DNA of 64,000 nucleotides from Sminthopsis crassicaudata (taxonomy: Eukaryota): contig NC_133619.1 in the NCBI RefSeq assembly GCF_048593235.1, forward strand, positions 651,846,558 through 651,910,557, written 5' to 3'. The stretch's first letter is position 1; every line of letters starts with the position of its first letter. A program made the position numbers and the translations under genes. Below, in pieces: positions 12,391 to 38,210 of this stretch. The notes under the pieces were generated by a model, which was not told where the DNA came from, did no database searches, and saw nothing but the letters and a program-made list of their open reading frames with translations.

Positions 12391-16274
<3,884 letters not shown>

Positions 16275-17790: not shown

Positions 17791-18157
17791 AGCCTGGACT
17801 CTGCGGGGACCCTTCTCCAGCCCCTTCCTAACTCCGCCCCTTGCTTCCCTGAAGCTATTAAAATACCCCGGCGGGGGCGGGGGGGGGGGGAGGAATGGTG
17901 TCCTGGGCCGCTTCTTTCATCCCGGAGCGGGTGCGAGGAAGGAAGCATGAGCACTTGGGATTCGGGGGCAGCCTCCTTCTGTGCGACCCCGAACTGCATC
18001 TCCCAGCAGGCCCTACGGCGGCCTCCTGTGGGCAGCCCATTTCACGGTGCCCAAGGTCTCATGGGAGTTGTAGTCAGTGTCTGGGGGCTGAGCTGCTCCT
18101 GGGTCGGAGGGGCTTGGGGACCAACTTCTGCTCCCCCTCCCTGGGTCCCAGGGCGCC

Positions 18158-21100
18158 ATGGCCGAGGCCCGCCAGGCAGCGACCTTCCGCCTAGAGCTGG
18201 GCCAGGGGACCCCCGGGCCAAGGTGGTGGAACGGAGCCTTGAAGGAGGTCGGCAGCGCGGGACTGCGCTCCTGGAGGCGGAGCCTGGCCCAGTGCAGGGT
18301 AAGGGGGAGGCTTTCAGCTCTCCTGTCTGCCCCCCGCCCCCTCCCCCATCCTCTGCTCACCCTCGCTCCTGGGCACTGCCAGGGTCGTGCTGCCCATGCC
18401 AGCCCCTCCGTCCCCTTCGGGGACCCTCCCCTGCAGCGGCTCCGCTGTCCAAGGTGCTGGAAGCCCAGCCCCCAGGGCCCATGGGGTTGGCTCTGGCGAG
18501 CCCCAGGAGCGTGTAGCTTGCGCTGCCCCCGGTCCCCGGGCGGGCGGCGGCCAGCGCGCGGCTTCTATCCCGGCAGGATGACGTCCTCCGCGGAGCCCGG
18601 CCGGCCGGCGCGGCCAGCGGCCTCTTCCTCTTCGCCGCCATCCAGGGCGCCCGCTTCGTGCAGCTGGACCCCTCCCTGGGGCTGGTGGACTGGATCAAGG
18701 CCAACCTTCCAGACTGGTGAGGCTCGGGGCAGCCCCTGCGGGCCCTCCGCCCGGCCCTGTTTGGGCTCCCCCCTGGCCCCGGGCGGGGAGGGGCGGGGCC
18801 GGGTGGGGGCGGGGCGGGGCGCTGCTCAGACTCCGGCCCGGGGGGCTGAGCCCCAGCCTGGTCCGCCTCCCCTCTCCCCAGGGGTGCGCGCCGGCTCCCC
18901 GCCTTCCAAGGGGCGCTGGCGGCCGCCGTCTTCGCCGGGGGCCTGTGGACGGCCCTGCTGCTGACCCTGCATGTGGTTCTGCGGCTCCTGCTGCGCTACC
19001 AGGGCTGGCTGAGCGAGCCTCGGGGGACGCTGTCCTTGCCCACGCGCTCCTGGCTGGTATGAGGAGCCTGGGGCCGCCTCCGCCGGCCCCACCCGCTCTC
19101 TGTGTCTCAGTGTCTCTGCTTTGTCTTGGGGACTGGGGGCCCTGAAGGAAGGGGGAGAGGGTCTGGGTCAGGGCCGGTGCTTCCTGCCTCCCCCAGGCCC
19201 TGGTCAGGATCTTCTCCGGCCGCCGCCCGACGCTCTACACCTACCAGCGCTCCCTGCCCTGCCTACCCCTGCCCTCTACCGCGGGCACCATAGCCAAGGT
19301 GGGCATGGCGCCGGCGAGGGCGTCCCCGATACCCAGAGCCGGGGCCTGTGGGAATCCACCTACGGGGAGGGGGGGGCGGGAAGTCAGGGGGGACGTGGGG
19401 ACTGGGGAGTCGGGGGGACGTGGGGACCGGGAGTCGGGGGAACGTGGGGACCGGGAGTCGGGGGGACGTGGGGACCGGGGAGTCAGCAGCCAGCATGATG
19501 AGCCAGGAAATCAGGGGCCCGCGTAATTAGGGTCTTGGAGTCTCGGAGGGGGCGGCCAGGGCCGGAGCTCTGTCGTGTCCCCCCCAGTACTTGGAGTCCG
19601 TGCGCCCGCTGCTGCCGGAAGAGGATTTCCAGGCCCTGAGCGGCCAGGCTCGCACCTTCCTCCACACAGAGGCGCCCCGGCTGCAGGCGCTTCTGGGCCT
19701 CAAGGCCTGGTGGGCGACCAATTACGTGAGTGCCGTCTCTGCTCCTTGGGGTGCCCTGCTGGGGGGGGCGCGGCCCGTTCTGATGCAGCACTTCCCCACA
19801 GGTGAGTGATTGGTGGGAAGAATACATCTACCTGCGCTCCCGAAGCTCCCTGCTGGGCAGCAGCAACTACTACATCCTGGTGAGCCCCTCCCCCTGGCGG
19901 CCAGGGCTCCCGTGGCTGAAGTTATGCCAGCTGGGAGGGGGCGCCGGCCGTGAGGGGATGCCTGGGAGCGGGGAGGCCAGGTGGGCGGGAGAGCAGGTGC
20001 CGCAGCCTCCGCCTGCCCGCAGGACTTTCTCTCGGCGGCCCCCACTCCTCTGCAGGCGGCCCGGGCTGGCAACGCTGTGTACGCCATGATGAGGTTCCGG
20101 GAGCGGCTTCGGCGTGGGGAGATGGAGCCCGTAAGAGGCTGGGAGGGGCCGGGGGGCGGGGGGGCCCGGTGGGCCCCGACCTGGGGTCATTCCCGCCTCC
20201 CTCGGTCCAGGCAACCCTGCTGGGGCTGCGCCCGCTGTGCTCGGCCCAATACCGGCGCATGTTCAACACCAGCCGGATCCCTGGGGTCTCCAGAGGTGAG
20301 AGATCCTGCGACCGGGACCCCTGCCCTGCGCCCGGGGGGGCTACAGACAAGAGACGATCCCCTGGCGCAGACTGTGGGTTTTCAGGGAAGGAGACCCGGG
20401 TTCCAATGCTGCCTCCCAGGCAGCCAGCGAGCATTTATGAGGCCCCTGCTGGGTACCGGGTCTTGGGCAGGAAGGGGTGCCAGCTTTCTGTAATGTCAGT
20501 GATGAGAAATGCCAGGGCTGGTAGCCTGATGGCGTTTGCGGCCCAGGCAGAGGCGCGGCCCAGGTGCCAATTCTGCGGGTTCGTGCCCTTTGGCGCCGCC
20601 TTCCCCAATGTTGACCTCTGACCTCGGGCACCCACGGCCTCCTTCCCAGACTGGCTGTGTCACGTGAGGGACAGCCACAGCTGCCATGTGGCCGTCCTGC
20701 ACCGGGGCCGCTTCTTCCGCCTGGGGACCCACGGGGGGCCAGGGGGCCACCTGCTGAACCCCCGTGTTCTGGAGCAGAAGTTTCAGCACATCCTGGATGA
20801 CCCAGCCCCAGCCCGGCCCTCTGAGGAGCACCTGGCGGCCCTGACGGCCGCTCCCAGGTAGGTTGGGCTTCCCGGCGGGCTGGGAGCCGTGGGGGTCAGG
20901 GGGTCTGGCCACACTCTGACCCGGCCCCTCCCCAACAGGGCCCTGTGGGCTCAGGCTCGGGCCTCCCTGCGGGCAGGGGCCGCCCTGGACGTGGTGGAAG
21001 GGGCCGCCTTCTTCGTGTGCCTGGAGGACACCCCGGGGCCCTCGGATGCGGCCCCTGAGGTGCTGCTGGACGAGCTGGCACAGTCCTTGCTGGTGGGGAC

Positions 21101-23570
21101 TGGCCACAGCAGGTGAGCCCCGGGCCCAGGCCCTCCCCTCACCTCCCGCCCAGGCAGGGCTCCCCTTTCCCCAAGGCCTCTGGTCTTCCACTTCTCCCAG
21201 ACCCCCAGCACAGACCTCCCTGCCAGGCCTCTCCTGCCCCCCACAGGTGGTTGGACAAGTCTCTGAACCTCGTGGTCTTCGCGGGCGGCCGCATGGGACT
21301 GAACGTGGAGCACGCCTGGGCTGACGCCCCCATCCCTTCGCACATGTGGGAGGCACGGCCGCCGAGCCCCAGACACCCAGGCCCTTTGGGTGGCCGCACC
21401 CCATCTCCAAGGGGCTTCTTAGAATGCGCAGGCTTTGGGGGGTTGGGGGGCCAGGGTGGGCCGGCCCCGGGCGGGGTCTTGACCGGCTTCTCTCTCCTGC
21501 TCCCCAGGCCGTCCTGGCTGCCGAGTGCTTCGAACTGGGCTACTCCGCCGACGGGCATTGCAGAGGGACCCCTGACCCCGAGGTGGGCCCCCCTGAGCGG
21601 CTGCACTGGGCGGTGCCTGAGGAGGTGAGAGCCCCCCCGGCCCCCACCCCGGGCGCCTGTGTGCCCGGCCTCTGCCTCCTCACGGTGCTCTCTTCCCGGG
21701 CAGGTGGCCACTTCCATCTCCCTGGCTCTGCGGGAGGCCCAGGCCTTGGCTCGAGACACCGAGTGCCACGTCCTTCCCTTCGCCCACTTTGGGAGAGGAT
21801 TCACCCGACGCTGCCGAGCCCCGGGGAGCAGCTTCGTGCAGCTGGCGCTGCAGCTGGCCCGCTTTCGGGTCAGTGCCCGGGCCGGGGGCCGCTGGGAGGG
21901 ATACCCGAGCTGGGCCAGGATTGGGGGGGGGGGTGAGCCAGCCAGGGAGGGGGCAGCTTAGCCCGGGACCAGGTGGTCCATCTGAGGAGGGGCCTGTGGG
22001 CCAGGCGTCCGTGCCCAGACTAACCCTCCCCCCCCTCCCTGTCCCGGGCCCACCAGGACCAGGGTGGCTTCTGCCTGACCTACGAGGCCTGCGTGACCAG
22101 GGCGTTTCTCGAGGGCCGCACGGAGACCGTCCGGTCATGCACCGAGGAATCCTGCGCCTTCGTCAGGGCCATGCAGGACCCGAGGCTGACGGTAGGCCCC
22201 CCCCACCTCCTCCCCGCTGTCCCCCAGAGCCTGGGGAGATGATAACCTCTGCTTGACCTCCCCCAGAATGCCCAGCGTCTGGCGCTCTTCCGAGCGGCCG
22301 CGGACAAGCACCGGGCTCTGTGTCGGGCAGCCCTGAGCGGCGAGGGCATCGATCGCCACCTCTTCTGCCTCTATCTCGTCTCTCGGTTCCTCCCACTCCC
22401 GTCCCCATTCTTGACCCAGGTCAGCGGACCCTTGCGGCGGGAGGAAGGGGGTGCCTCAGGGGAATGGGCCAAGCTTTGGGGTCCCCCGGCCCACACCCTC
22501 CTCCCCAACCCCACTTTCCAGGTTCGTGCCGAGCAGTGGAAACTCTCTACCAGCCAGATCCCCACACAGCAGCCACAGCTGTTCGATCCGGCCAATCATC
22601 CCGATTTTGTGTGCTGCGGCGGCGGCTTTGGGCCTGTGAGTGGGCCGGGGAGAGGGAGGAAGCCCCTGGATGCTGGGGGGGGGCAGGGACAGCCCCTGGA
22701 TGGGGGGGCTGCAGCGGACTGGGAACAAGTCCCCGACACTAAGGAGGGGCCTCTGGGGGGGGCCAGGGCGGGGCAGGGGGTGAGGATCGCGGCCCTGGGG
22801 ACTCTTCTCCTCCACTGGCTGCAGGCAGATGACGATGGCTATGGGGTGTCCTACATCTTCATGGGGGAGAACATGGTCACCTTCCACATTTCCTGCAAGG
22901 TCTCCAGCCCCGACACGGTTAGAGCTCTTGTCTTCCCAGGTGTCCAGGCCCCCCCTCCCCTCCCACCTCCCTGGTGTCCAGGCCCCCCCTTCCCCTTCCC
23001 TGGTGTCCAGGCCCCCCTCCCTCCTCTCCCCCTTTCCCCAGCATCCAGGCCCCCCATCCCCCATTGCCCCTCTGGAGAGGTCAGAGAAGGCTGGATTTGG
23101 AGCTCGTAGGACCTTGGGGGAGCATCTGTTTGGCTCATTTGAAGTCACACAAATAGGAAAGGGCAGCGTCAGGATTTGAATTTGTTACCACTGTGATGTT
23201 CCATGCCACCAATCCTGAGCCCAGGTTTTACCCTCTGCCTAGGACCCCACCCTCCCATCCCCCATTCCCCGGTGTCCAGGCCCCGTCCTTGCCCTCTCAG
23301 ACCCCTGAGGTCCCCTCTCGGGGTCCCCTTGGATTTCGGGCCCCTCGATCCTTTCTCAGTCGCCTCCCACCTTTGCAGGACGCCCGGCGCTTCGGGCAGC
23401 ACATTCAAGACGCCATGCTGGATGTGGCCTCGCTGTTTGGCCTGGGCGTGGGGCCCAGCACGGGGGCCCGGCCGGGCGGGACGGCCCGGGAGGACAAGAA
23501 CTCTGCTGAGGGCTCCCGGGGGCCTGGCTCCCGGCAGGAACCCCCTGCTCCCGGCGACCCAGAGCCCTGA
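18158..23570 (+). CDS. CPT1C: Carnitine palmitoyltransferase 1C (807 aa)
   Basis: Exons 18158-18298, 18577-18716, 18882-19056, 19197-19298, 19588-19725, 19802-19879, 20023-20130, 20211-20295, 20650-20857, 20939-21112, 21247-21352, 21508-21624, 21704-21868, 22057-22191, 22267-22419, 22522-22635, 22825-22917, 23379-23570 sum to 2424 nt with no internal stop (one GC-AG intron). Motifs [18 protein letters not shown] (catalytic His472), [21 protein letters not shown]. Synteny with PRMT1 and TSKS identifies it as the 1C paralogue. Confidence 0.93.
19387..19483. repeat. G-rich 24-bp minisatellite, about 4 copies, CPT1C intron 4
   Basis: Unit GGGGGGACGTGGGGACCGGGAGTC; AGTC ends fall at 19411, 19435, 19459 and 19483. 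Confidence 0.9.
22935..23060. repeat. Degenerate ~30-bp C-rich tandem repeat, CPT1C last intron
   Basis: Core GGTGTCCAGGCCCCC occurs three times plus a diverged fourth copy; a further copy lies at about 23270. Confidence 0.75.
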
Positions 23571-24369
23571 GGGAGCCGCCACCCCTGGGGGGTCCTGGCA
23601 GCCTCCCAGAGACCGAGGGGTCGAGGCGGCACCCCGGCACCTCGGAGCCTCGCTCGCAATCCGGGCCCAGGCTCGTCGGCCCGGCTCAGGTCCGGCTTCG
23701 TCACCTTGGCCGATCTTGGCCGTCCCCCTCCTGTGTCCTCGTCCCCCCATGAAGTCCGGTTTTTCTGGCTGGCTTGGGCCATCCCCACCCTGACGCTGTT
23801 CCACGGGCTGAGGTCGCCCCATTCTCGGGGGCCACGGGCTGCAGCTCAGACCTTGTCTCAGCGGCTGTCACCCCATGCCCCTTCCATGGGCCAAGGTCTA
23901 TGCAGTCTGAGCCCCGTCCACAAATTCGGCTTCAGCCTTGGCCTCGCCCTCCCCCCGCCTCCACACCATCCCTGGCTCTGGGCTGCGCCAGGCCGCGCCA
24001 GGCCGTCCCAGACACCCCTTGCCCCGCGTCCGCCCCAGGCTTATTCTAGCTCGGTGGGGCCCCCACTCGTGGGCCGGCCGGCCTGAGCCCCGGCTGCGGC
24101 AGGACCTCCGATGACCTGGGGCCCTCCGGGATTCAGGAAGCCATAATGAAGCGCCTGCTGCGTGCCCGCCGCGTGCTTGGAGCTGGGAAGGTGGAGGCCG
24201 CTCCTGCGGATGAGGAAACCCGCAGCGCGGGGAGCCTTCCCAGTCCGAACTTGGCTGGGCGCCGAGGGAGCCCCCGAGTGGGGGCAGGGGCGCGGGGATG
24301 GCCCAGCGGCCCGACCTCCGGGAGGCCTCCGCTCGAGCTGTCTGTGGGAGCCGGCGGGAAGGGCGGCCT

Positions 24370-24588: not shown

Positions 24589-24729
24589 NNNNNNNNNNNN
24601 NNNNNNNNNNNNNNNNNNNNNNNNNNNNNNNNNNNNNNNNNNNNNNNNNNNNNNNNNNNNNNNNNNNNNNNNNNNNNNNNNNNNNNNNNNNNNNNNNNNN
24701 NNNNNNNNNNNNNNNNNNNNNNNNNNNNN
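24589..24729. other. Assembly gap (141 N), preceded by a 30-nt G run at 24524-24553
   Basis: Directly visible in the sequence. Confidence 0.99.
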
Positions 24730-35484: not shown

Positions 35485-35790
35485 CTGACCCAGATGAGTA
35501 AAGGTAGTGCTGGGCCTCAAATCTGAAAGCTGCCCACTCTTTTTCTGCTCCACTGTGGCCAACTGTATGTTTGCTTAGCTTTTTGTCCAAGGTAGCAACA
35601 AAGTGTATGTCTATGCAGAAGCACTTTGATCTGTTGATGTTAAGTTTTCTAGTGGTCATTATGCCTTCCAGTCTTCATTTTTGCTGAATCTGAACTTCAG
35701 CTTAGAGAAGATAAGTCTATGGTCAGTCCAGCACTCTGCACCTCACATTGCCTTGCTCATTCTCATATCCTGTCTGTCTCTTCTTCTTAC

Positions 35791-38210
35791 AATCATATAG
35801 TCCATGCAGAAAAAGCATTTGACAAAATCCAACATCCATTCCTACTAAAAACTCTTGAGAGTATAGGAATAAATGGACTATTACTTAGAATAATCAGGAG
35901 CATATATTTAAGACCTTCAGTAAGCATAATATGCAATAGAAATAAACTGCAACCTTTCCCAGTAAGATCAGGAGTGAAACAAGGTTGCCCACTATCACCA
36001 TTACTATTCAATATAGTACTAGAAACGCTAGCCTCGGCAATAAGAGCCGAGAAAGAGATTCAAGGAATTAGAGTAGGAAATGAGGAAATCAAACTATCAC
36101 TTTTTGCAGATGACATGATGGTATACTTAGAGAACCCCAAAGACTCTGCTAAAAAGCTACTAGAAATAATTCAAAATTTCAGCAAAGTGGCAGGATACAA
36201 AATAAATCCACATAAATCCTCGGCATTTTTATATATCACTAACAAAATGCAACAGCAAGAGATACAAAGAGAAATTCCATTCCAAACAAATGTTGAGAGT
36301 ATGAAGTATTTGGGAATCCATCTACCAAAGAAAAGTCAGGAATTATATGAGAAAAATTACAAAACACTTGCCACAAAAATAAAATCAGATTTAAATAATT
36401 GGAAAGACATTCAGTGCTCTTGGATAGGCCGAGCGAATATAATAAAGATGACAATACTCCCCAAACTAATATATTTATTTAGTGCTATACCAATCAGACT
36501 CCCAAGAAACTATTTCAATGACCTAGAAAAAATAACAACAAAATTCATATGGAAGAATAAAAGGTCGAGAATTGCAAGGGATCTAATGAAAAAAAAAGTC
36601 AGAGGAAGGTGGTCTAAGTGTACCTGATCTAAAGCTATATTATATAGCAGCAGTCACCAAAACCATTTGGTATTGGCTACGAAATAGACCGGTAGATCAG
36701 TGGAACAGATTAGATACAAAGGACAAAAAAGGATACATCTATAGCAATCTAATCTTTGACAAACCCAAAGATACCAACATTAGGGATAAAAATTCATTAT
36801 TTGGAAAAAACTGTTGGGAAAACTGGAAATTAATATGGCAGAAATTAGATATGGATCCACACTTAACACCATATACCAAGATAAGATCAAAATGGGTCCA
36901 TGATTTAGGCATAAAGAGGGAGATAATAAATAGATTAGAGGAACAGAGGATAGTCTACCTCTCAGACCTGTGGAGGAGGAAGGAATTTATGACCAGAGGA
37001 GAACTAGAGATCATTATTGATCACAAAATAGAAGATTTTGATTACATCAAACTAAAAAGTTTCTGTACAAATAATACTAATGCAAACAAGATTAGAAGGG
37101 AAGTAACAAATTGGGAAAATATTTTTAAAAACAAAGGTTCTGACAAAGGTCTCATTTCCAAAATATATAGAGAACTGACCCTAATTTATAAGAAACTGAA
37201 CCATTCTCCAATTGATAAATGGTCAAAGGATATGAACAGACAATTCTCAGATGAAGAAATTGAAACTATATCCACTCACATGAAAGAGTGTTCCAAATCA
37301 CTACTGATCAGAGAAATGCAAATTAAGACCACTCTGAGATACCACTACACACCTGTCAGATTGGCTAAGATGACAGGAACAAATAATGACAAATGTTGGA
37401 GGGGATGTGGGGAAATTGGGACACTAATACATTGCTGGTGGAGTTGTGAAAGAATCCAGCCATTCTAGAGAGCAATCTGGAACTATGCCCCATAAGTCAT
37501 CAAACTGTGCATACCCTTTGACCCAGCAGCGCTACTACTGGGATTATATCCCAAAGAAATACTAAAGAGCGGAAAGAGACATATATGTGCCAAAATGTTT
37601 GTGGCAGCTCTTTTTGTTGTAGCTAGAAACTGGAGGATGAATGGATGTCCATCAGTTGGAGAATGGTTGGGTAAATTGTGGTATATGAAGGTTATGGAAT
37701 ATTATTGCTCTGTAAGAAATGACCAGCAGGAGGAATACAGAGAGGCCTGGAGAGACTTACATCAAGTGATGCTGAGTGAAATGAGCAGAACCAGAAGATC
37801 ACTGTACACTTCAACAACAATACTGTATGAGGATGTATTCTGATGGAAGTGGAAATCTTCAACATAAAGAAAAACCAACTCACTTCCAGTTGATCAATGA
37901 TGGACAGAAATAACTATACCCAGAGAAGAAACACTGGGAAGCGAATGTAAATTGTTAGCACTAATATCTGTCTGCCCAGGTTGCATGTACCTTCGGATTC
38001 TAATGCTTATTGTGCAACAAGAAAATGATATTCACACACATGTATTGTATGTAGACTATATTGTAACACATGTAAAATGTATGGGATTGCCTGTCATTGG
38101 GGGGAGGGAATAGAGGGGGGGATAATTTGGAAAAAAGAATACTAGGGATAATATTATAAAAAATATATATATAATAAAAATTATTAATTAAAAAAAATCA
38201 TATAGTCCAT
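35791..38210 (+). mobile_element. 5'-truncated L1 (about 2.4 kb) with 15-bp TSD
   Basis: TSD AATCATATAGTCCAT at 35791-35805 and 38196-38210. ORF2 RT (AEKAFDKIQHPFL...GVKQGCPLSPLLF...FADDM) and C-terminus, with a frameshift at the A run near 36590. Confidence 0.95.

What the first reader, a model, noticed from the sequence alone, without database searches (positions are those of the whole stretch)
22093..22095. CPT1C has Val at the malonyl-CoA-sensing methionine (CPT1A M593 / human CPT1C M589)
Seen: [22 protein letters not shown] (GTG, Val592) versus LTYEASMTRLF (CPT1A) and LTYESAMTRLF (CPT1C). Known: this Met separates malonyl-CoA-sensitive carnitine acyltransferases from insensitive ones; mutating it abolishes inhibition in CPT1A and malonyl-CoA sensing in CPT1C. 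The gene is otherwise intact (807 aa, all exons in phase). Inference: a natural CPT1C that may not sense malonyl-CoA, useful for separating its sensor role from its scaffold role (AMPA-receptor trafficking, hypothalamic energy sensing).
Basis: partly seen in the sequence, partly recalled or inferred. Interest (0 to 1): 0.7.

Follow-up and report, generated by a model that had tools for sequence, protein, structure and literature searches.

The report
Marsupial CPT1C carries Val at sensor methionine
The brain protein CPT1C of this marsupial (fat-tailed dunnart) really has valine where other vertebrates have the methionine needed for malonyl-CoA sensing. The change is shared by nearly all marsupials rather than being one animal's oddity, and whether it alters sensing has not been tested.

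Summary
GTG (Val) sits at 22093-22095 in a 135-nt exon of an intact, spliced and expressed 18-exon CPT1C gene of 807 aa, making it Val592. The gene lies between PRMT1 and TSKS. Contigs from one other DNA sample and two RNA samples show the same codon.

The window is Sminthopsis crassicaudata; the gene model equals RefSeq XP_074164335.1.

Antechinus, Trichosurus, Petaurus, Phascolarctos, Vombatus, Dromiciops and Gracilinanus also have Val. Monodelphis has Leu. Sarcophilus has gone back to Met. Platypus CPT1C, reptile CPT1C, CPT1A/B and 123 of 127 placental CPT1C clusters have Met; Kogia has Val and Dasypus has Thr.

Met->Val therefore arose once on the marsupial stem. That stem is long (0.58 against 0.23 for placentals) and strongly GC-biased (GC3 0.845). 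The same burst remodelled the N-terminal regulatory domain: Pfam CPT_N scores 16-32 bits against 64-84 elsewhere, and His5 became Arg.

The catalytic His and most other signature residues are kept, and crown marsupials evolve at normal rates, so the protein is functional.

Whether Val weakens malonyl-CoA sensing is untested. Only Ser, Ala and Glu replacements are known to abolish it. Interest is moderate.

The parts
22093..22095 (+). Codon 592, GTG = Val, at the position of rat CPT1A Met593 and mouse CPT1C Met589
   Evidence: Sequence; frame and number; aligned with COT Met and CrAT Ser; unchanged in contigs of X9, X11 and X14
22092..22093 (+). CpG formed by the last base of Cys591 (TGC) and the first base of Val592 (GTG). 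GTG>ATG would therefore be a CpG transition.
   Evidence: Sarcophilus has Met here while its near relatives Antechinus and Sminthopsis have Val
22057..22191 (+). Coding exon 14 (135 nt, 45 codons, residues 580-624). It holds the strand LTYEACV and the GRTET motif.
   Evidence: Splice joints in RNA contigs; translation; strand 586-592 in the AF2 model
18158..23570 (+). CPT1C coding region, 18 exons, 807 aa. Exons: 18158-18298, 18577-18716, 18882-19056, 19197-19298, 19588-19725, 19802-19879, 20023-20130, 20211-20295, 20650-20857, 20939-21112, 21247-21352, 21508-21624, 21704-21868, 22057-22191, 22267-22419, 22522-22635, 22825-22917, 23379-23570.
   Evidence: tblastn with Prolemur CPT1C; 15 listed RNA joints; boundaries and phases; identity to P0396; Pfam Carn_acyltransf 530.7 bits
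18158..18298 (+). Exon 1, residues 1-47: the N-terminal regulatory domain, strongly diverged ([39 protein letters not shown]...)
   Evidence: Pfam CPT_N 21.9 bits, below the cut-off of 27, against 64-84 bits in placental, platypus and turtle CPT1C; alignment, His5->Arg in all marsupials
21353..21507 (+). Intron 11, with a GC..AG boundary
   Evidence: Sequence. The RNA joint 21350->21506 has 4 letters of slack, which allows the cut 21352/21508.
21247..21352 (+). Exon 11 with the catalytic His ([10 protein letters not shown]; His472, Asp476). The CPT1A Asn464 equivalent is replaced by Gly463.
   Evidence: E471, H472 and D476 are invariant in 47 sequences
14620..16080 (+). PRMT1 exons upstream (methyltransferase fold and PRMT_C subdomain)
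   Evidence: Pfam on stop-free stretches: PRMT_C 52.6 bits, PrmA/Methyltransf_25 about 21 bits
55710..59107 (-). TSKS exons downstream on the opposite strand
   Evidence: Pfam TSKS 23.9 and 15.6 bits, both below the cut-off of 27

Best explanation
Val592 is a genuine, transcribed state of dunnart (Sminthopsis crassicaudata) CPT1C and the ancestral state of all living marsupials. Met changed to Val (ATG>GTG) once on the marsupial stem lineage. This happened during a burst of fast, GC-biased divergence of CPT1C that also remodelled the N-terminal regulatory domain. After that burst the protein settled back under ordinary purifying selection. It keeps the catalytic His/Asp, the YE..GRTET substrate strand and most residues of the malonyl-CoA-sensitive signature, so it is a working CPT1C.

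At this one position marsupials now accept Val, Leu or Met, so the strict need for Met seen everywhere else has been lost.

Inferred, not shown: Val592 ends the beta-strand that carries the carnitine-contact residues. A shorter, branched hydrophobic side chain there most likely lowers or retunes malonyl-CoA affinity rather than switching it off as Ser does.
For: Real and expressed:
- Codon read directly.
- Same codon in a second DNA sample and in spliced RNA contigs from two studies.
- Model identical to RefSeq P0396.

Clade-wide:
- Val in 8 marsupial species of four orders, Leu in Monodelphis, Met in Sarcophilus.
- Met in platypus, reptile CPT1C and CPT1A/B, and in 146 of 150 family representatives.
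- The tree needs at least 5 changes of state in all; the distribution of states places a single one of them on the marsupial stem.

Burst, then constraint:
- Marsupial stem 0.58 against placental stem 0.23.
- Crown paths are similar: Sminthopsis to Monodelphis about 0.26, Mus to Trichechus about 0.27.
- Polymorphism is lower in coding sequence (6 sites in 2424 nt, 4 of them silent) than in non-coding sequence (22 in about 3.5 kb).

GC bias:
- GC3 0.845 and introns 0.706 GC.
- GARP residues 33-40% against 25-28% in placentals, and 11-14 Met against 14-19 in placentals and platypus.
- ATG>GTG is a weak-to-strong change.

Conserved core: His472, Asp476, Glu589, Arg600, Glu602, Cys607 and Thr314 are kept.

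Regulatory domain: CPT_N scores 16-32 bits in marsupials against 64-84 elsewhere.

Structure: strand 586-592, with mean pLDDT 90 for residues 581-590 and 75 for 591-600.
Against: - No binding or inhibition data exist for Val at this position.
- From my memory of the Morillas 2003 abstract (the paper is not held), Ala also nearly abolished sensitivity in CPT1A. Ala is a small hydrophobic residue, so a shorter side chain alone may be enough to lose it.
- His5->Arg and the remodelled N-terminal switch could remove sensing regardless of residue 592.
- The GC-bias argument rests on composition only.
- The tree used the 'quick' method, and several marsupial rows have skewed composition.
Confidence: 0.55

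Rival explanations
1. Marsupial CPT1C no longer senses malonyl-CoA at all. Loss of the Met, His5->Arg and the rebuilt N-terminal domain together uncoupled the protein from the metabolite on the marsupial stem. It survives for its scaffold and thioesterase roles.
For: - M589S in mouse CPT1C and M593S in CPT1A are used as malonyl-CoA-insensitive forms (PMC6323189, PMC6927751, PMC9328656).
- The site changes twice within crown marsupials, whose branch lengths sum to only about 0.8 changes per site. It changes only twice among 127 placental CPT1C clusters and not at all in the CPT1A/B sampled.
- CPT_N falls below the Pfam cut-off in all marsupials tested except Dromiciops.
- The N-terminal state sets malonyl-CoA affinity in CPT1A (PMC10076611).
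- The Asn464 equivalent is Gly or Ser in six of the ten marsupial species.
Against: - The site stays hydrophobic (V/L/M) in all ten marsupials and never takes the Ser of the insensitive enzymes.
- Thr314 and Cys608 equivalents are kept in nearly all marsupials, and Glu3 is kept in all that have an N-terminus. The Ala478 equivalent is Ala in dasyurids and didelphids but Thr or Val in the others, and Cys in placentals.
- Sarcophilus went back to Met.
- There is no experimental datum.
Confidence: 0.27
2. The replacement is functionally silent. Val, Leu and Met are interchangeable here, marsupial CPT1C senses malonyl-CoA like the mouse protein, and the change is a by-product of GC-biased substitution.
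For: - The exchange is conservative, with toggling among V, L and M.
- Kogia breviceps CPT1C, otherwise like its Tursiops orthologue, also has Val.
- The gene shows strong GC drive.
- The reversal at a CpG needs no selection.
Against: - Met is kept in the CPT1A/B, platypus and reptile sequences sampled and in 146 of 150 family representatives. That argues the side chain matters where sensing is known.
- From memory, Ala at this position abolishes sensitivity.
Confidence: 0.15
3. The Val is an assembly error, a rare allele, or belongs to a decaying gene or another CPT1 paralogue.
For: The closest first hit, P0001, had Met. It is a 425-aa mis-modelled UniParc entry whose matched exons are identical in identity pattern and local sequence to Sarcophilus.
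Against: - The same codon is in three further samples from three studies.
- Val is shared by seven other marsupial species.
- The 807-aa frame is intact, with canonical splice sites used in RNA.
- The protein sits inside the CPT1C clade with support 99-100.
- PRMT1 and TSKS flank the gene.
Confidence: 0.02

Closest known systems
Mouse CPT1C M589S (engineered malonyl-CoA-blind CPT1C)
   Same: Same gene family member and same position. Loss of the Met is the defining feature of the mutant, which fails to rescue axon growth, lysosome transport and ABHD6 inhibition (PMC6927751, PMC9328656, PMC6323189).
   Different: The mutant has Ser, the residue of the insensitive enzymes. The dunnart has Val in a protein only about 52% identical to Mus caroli CPT1C, with a rebuilt N-terminal domain. 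No assay exists for Val.
Rat CPT1A Met593 mutants (Morillas et al. 2003, J Biol Chem 278:9058, cited in PMC6323189)
   Same: Homologous position in the same motif, LTYEAS-M-TRLF. It belongs to a five-residue signature of malonyl-CoA-sensitive acyltransferases.
   Different: The tested replacements were Ser and, from my memory of the abstract, Ala and Glu, not Val or Leu. CPT1A is a mitochondrial enzyme with high activity. Of the signature, dunnart CPT1C keeps Thr314, Ala478 and Cys608 and has changed Asn464 (to Gly) and Met593 (to Val).
Sarcophilus harrisii CPT1C (XP_031817588.1, P0363)
   Same: About 94% identical to the window protein over the exons. Same N-terminal domain and same flanking residues, LTYEAC[12 protein letters not shown].
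   Different: It has Met at the site, a reversal within Dasyuridae after the split from Antechinus. This gives a natural near-isogenic Val/Met pair.
Kogia breviceps CPT1C (XP_066874710.1, P0405) and Dasypus novemcinctus CPT1C (P0247)
   Same: Natural CPT1C proteins without the Met: Val in Kogia and Thr in Dasypus.
   Different: These are single placental lineages in an otherwise typical placental CPT1C with a normal N-terminal domain. They were not checked in reads here.
Carnitine octanoyltransferase (PDB 1XL7) and carnitine acetyltransferase (PDB 1NM8, 1NDB)
   Same: Same fold family (Pfam PF00755) and the same strand. COT, reported to be malonyl-CoA sensitive, has Met; CrAT, reported insensitive, has Ser (residues; sensitivity from my memory of Morillas 2003).
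   Different: They are soluble enzymes without the N-terminal regulatory domain and membrane helices. The window protein has neither Met nor Ser.

Membership tests
Choline/carnitine O-acyltransferase family (Pfam PF00755) | Full-length Carn_acyltransf domain above the curated cut-off | tested here: met
   530.7 bits, residues 175-754, profile 1-573 of 574
Choline/carnitine O-acyltransferase family (Pfam PF00755) | Catalytic His in the EHxxxD motif | tested here: met
   NVEHAWAD; E471, H472 and D476 are invariant in a 47-sequence alignment
CPT1C orthologue group | Placement inside the CPT1C clade, apart from CPT1A and CPT1B | tested here: met
   Marsupial clade 100*, sister to placental CPT1C 99*, platypus CPT1C outside 100*, reptile CPT1C outside 96*. 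Identical to RefSeq CPT1C isoform X2 of Sminthopsis crassicaudata.
CPT1C orthologue group | Conserved neighbourhood PRMT1 - CPT1C - TSKS (the human 19q13.33 order, from my own knowledge) | tested here: met
   PRMT_C 52.6 bits upstream on +; TSKS 23.9 bits (sub-threshold) downstream on -. Scan notes place IRF3 before and AP2A1 after.
CPT1C orthologue group | N-terminal regulatory domain (Pfam CPT_N, PF16484) | tested here: not met
   21.9 bits against a cut-off of 27. Other marsupials score 16.4-32.4; placental, platypus and turtle CPT1C score 64-84. The domain is recognisable by position and by the MAEA...GLRSW ends, but strongly diverged.
CPT1C orthologue group | C-terminal tail beyond the end of the acyltransferase domain | tested here: met
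   Residues 755-807 lie beyond the Pfam domain. Residues 769-807 are low-confidence and unstructured in the model.
CPT1C orthologue group | Brain or neuron-restricted expression | not testable with these tools
   Spliced RNA contigs show that the gene is expressed, but the tissues of the coded runs are not given.
Malonyl-CoA-sensitive carnitine acyltransferases (five-residue signature of Morillas 2003, recalled from memory) | Met at the CPT1A-593 position | tested here: not met
   Val592
Malonyl-CoA-sensitive carnitine acyltransferases (five-residue signature of Morillas 2003, recalled from memory) | Thr314, Ala478 and Cys608 equivalents | tested here: met
   T314, A477 and C607 in the window protein
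Malonyl-CoA-sensitive carnitine acyltransferases (five-residue signature of Morillas 2003, recalled from memory) | Asn464 equivalent | tested here: not met
   Gly463 in the three dasyurids, Ser in Trichosurus, Phascolarctos and Vombatus, Asn elsewhere
Malonyl-CoA-sensitive carnitine acyltransferases (five-residue signature of Morillas 2003, recalled from memory) | Measured binding of, or inhibition by, malonyl-CoA | not testable with these tools
   Needs protein expression and a binding or inhibition assay.

The most novel reading that the evidence does not exclude
All marsupials carry a CPT1C that was uncoupled from malonyl-CoA on their stem lineage, through loss of the sensor Met, His5->Arg and a rebuilt N-terminal switch. 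If so, the nutrient-sensing role of CPT1C in neurons is absent or rewired in a whole mammalian infraclass, and the Sarcophilus reversal to Met is a natural partial revertant.
Probability: 0.27. Interest if true: 0.7.

Novelty: new variant of a known kind. Interest (0 to 1): 0.45.

Why it matters
CPT1C is studied as a neuronal malonyl-CoA sensor that controls AMPA-receptor trafficking, lysosome transport, ABHD6 activity and hypothalamic energy balance. The field separates its sensor role from its scaffold role with a single engineered mutant, M589S.

This work shows that a whole infraclass of mammals lacks that Met and has a remodelled regulatory N-terminus, while keeping the rest of the protein under constraint. 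That offers natural test material:
- a clade-wide variant;
- a Leu variant (Monodelphis);
- a near-isogenic Val/Met pair (Antechinus or Sminthopsis against Sarcophilus);
- two independent placental cases (Kogia, Dasypus).

The dunnart is being developed as a laboratory marsupial with a chromosome-scale genome, iPSCs and gene editing (abstract of PMC12527288, seen), so the test is practical.

If Val proves silent, the result still has value. It would narrow what the Met does and caution against reading 'not Met' as 'not sensing'. The sequences are already public as predicted proteins, and the functional effect is unknown, so this is a lead rather than a discovery.

Tried and rejected
- Species-specific oddity: rejected. 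My first reading gave 60% to a lineage-specific change, and the best first hit P0001 (95% identical) had Met, which suggested a very recent change. Searches showed that P0001 matches Sarcophilus, the one marsupial exception.
- Monotreme origin: I considered it because of the 70% GC. It was rejected by identity to Sminthopsis RefSeq proteins.
- Assembly error or rare allele: rejected by contigs from other samples.
- The look-up of encoding contigs for P0001 found nothing, so no orthologous DNA was available and no dN/dS or weak-to-strong codon test could be run.
- Morillas 2003 is not held. Searches for M593 and 'O site' papers found nothing useful. What I say about M593A/E, the five-residue signature and the two malonyl-CoA sites comes from memory.
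Two further searches were needed to reach marsupials.
- The search of earlier findings by words found nothing on CPT1C.
- No CPT1 catalytic-domain structure turned up in the PDB sequence search, and the tools give no coordinates. The distance from residue 592 to the ligand sites could therefore not be measured. Only the strand assignment is used.
- The joined step was left out. Exon 14 was searched by reference, and full-length work used the public protein P0396. Scripts held the exons as coordinates only.
Full report
**1. What is in the sequence**

Bases 22093-22095 read GTG. They are codon 13 of a 135-nt exon, 22057-22191 on the + strand, with an AG acceptor, a GT donor and phase 0 at both ends. 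The exon translates to [45 protein letters not shown].

A tblastn with a lemur CPT1C (P0025) found every exon of a CPT1 gene between 18158 and 23570. RNA contigs then fixed the boundaries. The model has 18 coding exons, 2424 nt and 807 aa, and the Val is residue 592. All introns are GT..AG except intron 11, which is GC..AG.

Exon 14 was searched by reference. Once the public protein P0396 (XP_074164335.1) proved identical to all 18 exon peptides at the right offsets, it stood in for the full length.

**2. Is the codon real?**

One read-laying run over 18000-23900 gave these results:
- X9, a DNA run from another sample and study, has a contig over 21924-23900. It differs from the window at eight places, one of them 53 bases upstream of the codon, but nowhere in exon 14.
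- X11 and X14, from two further studies, have spliced contigs that hold the whole exon between the joints 21868/22057 and 22191/22267, with no difference.
- X2 does not cover the place.

So the Val codon is present in at least three samples besides the assembly, and it is in mature RNA. These are contigs, which can hide rare alleles.

Across the 5.9 kb, 28 variable positions were seen. Six lie in the 2424 coding bases and four of those are silent. Twenty-two lie in about 3.5 kb of non-coding sequence. That is what purifying selection would give.

**3. Which gene and which animal**

- Pfam gives Carn_acyltransf at 530.7 bits over residues 175-754.
- A maximum-likelihood tree of 41 CPT1 proteins places the window protein in a marsupial CPT1C clade (support 100). 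That clade is sister to placental CPT1C (99), with platypus CPT1C (100) and reptile CPT1C (96) outside, and CPT1A and CPT1B elsewhere.
- PRMT1 exons lie upstream on the same strand (PRMT_C, 52.6 bits). TSKS exons lie downstream on the other strand (23.9 bits, sub-threshold). From my own knowledge this is the human 19q13.33 order. Scan notes add IRF3 before and AP2A1 after.
- The exon peptides are 100% identical to the RefSeq CPT1C isoforms of Sminthopsis crassicaudata, the fat-tailed dunnart.

**4. The turn in the story**

A search of 1.84 billion representatives with exon 14 found Met at the site in 146 of the 150 best hits and Val in none. The best hit, P0001, was 95% identical and had Met, which made the Val look like a very recent change.

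P0001 is a mis-modelled 425-aa UniParc entry. Its matched exons are the same as those of Sarcophilus harrisii. Searches seeded with P0001 and then with Petaurus CPT1C brought in the marsupials. The states at the site are:

| Group | State |
|---|---|
| Sminthopsis, Antechinus, Trichosurus, Petaurus, Phascolarctos, Vombatus, Dromiciops, Gracilinanus | Val |
| Monodelphis | Leu |
| Sarcophilus | Met |
| Platypus CPT1C, five reptile CPT1Cs, all sampled CPT1A and CPT1B | Met |
| Placental CPT1C, 127 clusters | 123 Met; 3 Val (all Kogia breviceps isoforms); 1 Thr (Dasypus novemcinctus) |

On the tree the fewest changes are five:
- Met->Val on the marsupial stem;
- Val->Leu in Monodelphis;
- Val->Met in Sarcophilus, after its split from Antechinus;
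- Met->Val in Kogia;
- Met->Thr in Dasypus.

The Val is thus old and clade-wide, spanning both American and Australian marsupials.

**5. The setting of the change**

Branch lengths:
- The marsupial stem is 0.58 changes per site, against 0.23 for the placental stem.
- Within the crowns the rates are alike. Sminthopsis to Monodelphis is about 0.26, and Mus to Trichechus is about 0.27.
- This pattern indicates a burst of change followed by normal constraint.

Composition:
- The gene is very GC-rich: GC3 0.845, introns 0.706, and small introns of 75-461 nt.
- Marsupial CPT1C proteins are shifted towards Gly, Ala, Arg and Pro (33-40%, against 25-28% in placentals and 30% in platypus). They are shifted away from Phe, Tyr, Met, Ile, Asn and Lys (11-13% against 17-20%).
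- They hold 11-14 Met, against 14-19 in the placental and platypus CPT1Cs sampled.
- ATG>GTG is a weak-to-strong change, the kind that such a drive favours. GC-biased gene conversion is the usual cause. This is my inference and was not tested at codon level.

CpG context: the G of GTG follows the C of the Cys591 codon (TGC|GTG), so the site is a CpG. The Sarcophilus reversal GTG>ATG is the commonest type of mammalian mutation.

**6. The same burst hit the regulatory domain**

The N-terminal 47 residues score 16-32 bits on Pfam CPT_N in six marsupials. The dunnart scores 21.9, below the cut-off of 27. Placental, platypus and turtle CPT1C score 64-84.

The alignment shows His5->Arg in every marsupial and a replaced stretch at residues 11-35. 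In CPT1A this domain (residues 1-47) switches between two states that set malonyl-CoA affinity (PMC10076611).

Of the five signature residues of malonyl-CoA-sensitive acyltransferases (Morillas 2003, recalled from memory; the paper is not held):
- the dunnart keeps Thr314, Ala478 and Cys608;
- it has changed Asn464 to Gly and Met593 to Val.

The catalytic His472 and Asp476, Glu589, Arg600 and Glu602 are kept.

**7. Where the residue sits**

An AlphaFold2 model built on a 47-sequence alignment (pLDDT 81.9, pTM 0.83) puts residues 586-592 (LTYEACV) in a beta-strand, with Val592 as its last residue.

From memory of the carnitine acetyltransferase structures, the Tyr and the residue two places after it on this strand contact the carnitine carboxylate. 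Residue 592, two places further, would then face the same side. This is an inference from strand geometry. The tools give no coordinates, so it was not measured.

**8. What it means for sensing**

Shown in papers:
- M589S makes mouse CPT1C behave as malonyl-CoA-blind in axon growth, lysosome transport and ABHD6 control (PMC6927751, PMC9328656).
- That mutant was designed from CPT1A M593S (PMC6323189).

Not shown anywhere I could find: the effect of Val or Leu at this position.

For a real loss or weakening:
- Met is nearly invariant wherever sensing is established.
- Marsupials change the site twice in a small tree.
- The N-terminal switch is rebuilt.
- From memory, even Ala abolishes sensitivity in CPT1A.

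For little effect:
- The site stays hydrophobic in all ten marsupials and never takes the Ser of insensitive enzymes.
- Three of the five signature residues are kept in the dunnart.
- Sarcophilus regained Met.
- Kogia carries Val in an otherwise typical placental CPT1C.
- A GC drive explains the origin without selection.

My odds are:

| Reading | Odds |
|---|---|
| Retuned or weakened but present sensing in a functional CPT1C | about 0.55 |
| Complete uncoupling | about 0.27 |
| Fully silent | about 0.15 |
| Artefact | about 0.02 |

**9. Novelty**

The proteins are public as automatic predictions. No paper in the library pairs CPT1C with 'marsupial', and a broader search pairing CPT1C with opossum, Monodelphis, Tasmanian devil, dunnart or metatherian listed none among its top hits. 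The one evolutionary study of Cpt1 genes found here includes Monodelphis but does not discuss the site (PMC4589379).

I rate this a new variant of a known kind and of moderate interest. It is a clean natural experiment for a small field, with the key measurement still to be made.

Noticed in passing
window 18158-18298 (residues 1-47): The N-terminal regulatory domain of marsupial CPT1C is so diverged that Pfam CPT_N falls below its cut-off (16-32 bits against 64-84 in other vertebrates). His5 is Arg in every marsupial. This may matter more for malonyl-CoA sensing than residue 592.
   Followed up: partly
window 18158-23570: The gene has extreme GC content (GC3 0.845, introns 0.706 GC, introns of 75-461 nt). 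The amino-acid make-up is shifted to match (GARP 37%, FYMINK 13%) in all marsupial CPT1Cs but not in platypus or placentals. This suggests GC-biased gene conversion on the marsupial stem.
   Followed up: partly
window 22057-22191; proteins P0368 and P0393: RefSeq isoforms X3 and X5 of dunnart CPT1C skip exon 14 exactly (in frame, 45 aa). That removes the whole LTYEACV...GRTET strand. The two RNA contigs laid here include the exon, and two further joints were not shown by the tool.
   Followed up: no
window 21353-21507: Intron 11 has a GC..AG boundary, and RNA contigs of two runs use it.
   Followed up: yes
proteins P0405 (Kogia breviceps) and P0247 (Dasypus novemcinctus): Two placental CPT1Cs also lack the Met (Val in Kogia, Thr in Dasypus), while their relatives Tursiops and Tamandua keep it. 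These were not verified in reads.
   Followed up: partly
window 18734, 21192, 23527: Differences between individuals: a 9-bp deletion in intron 2 (X9), an 18-bp insertion in intron 10 (X9 and X2), and G>A at 23527 giving Gly794Asp in the unstructured tail in three of four runs. For the last, the assembly may carry the rarer allele.
   Followed up: partly
window 24589-24729: Run of 141 N just downstream of CPT1C. It was left as it is.
   Followed up: no
window about 26000-52000: An AT-rich block (GC 0.37-0.41) lies between the GC-rich CPT1C and TSKS regions. It has long open frames on the + strand at 35653-36624 and 36590-37465. An earlier scan note calls a nearby element retroviral. I did not examine it.
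   Followed up: no
protein P0394 (isoform X1, 823 aa): RefSeq isoform X1 carries 16 extra residues between the exon 16 and exon 17 peptides. This points to an alternative splice site in intron 16 (22636-22824).
   Followed up: no
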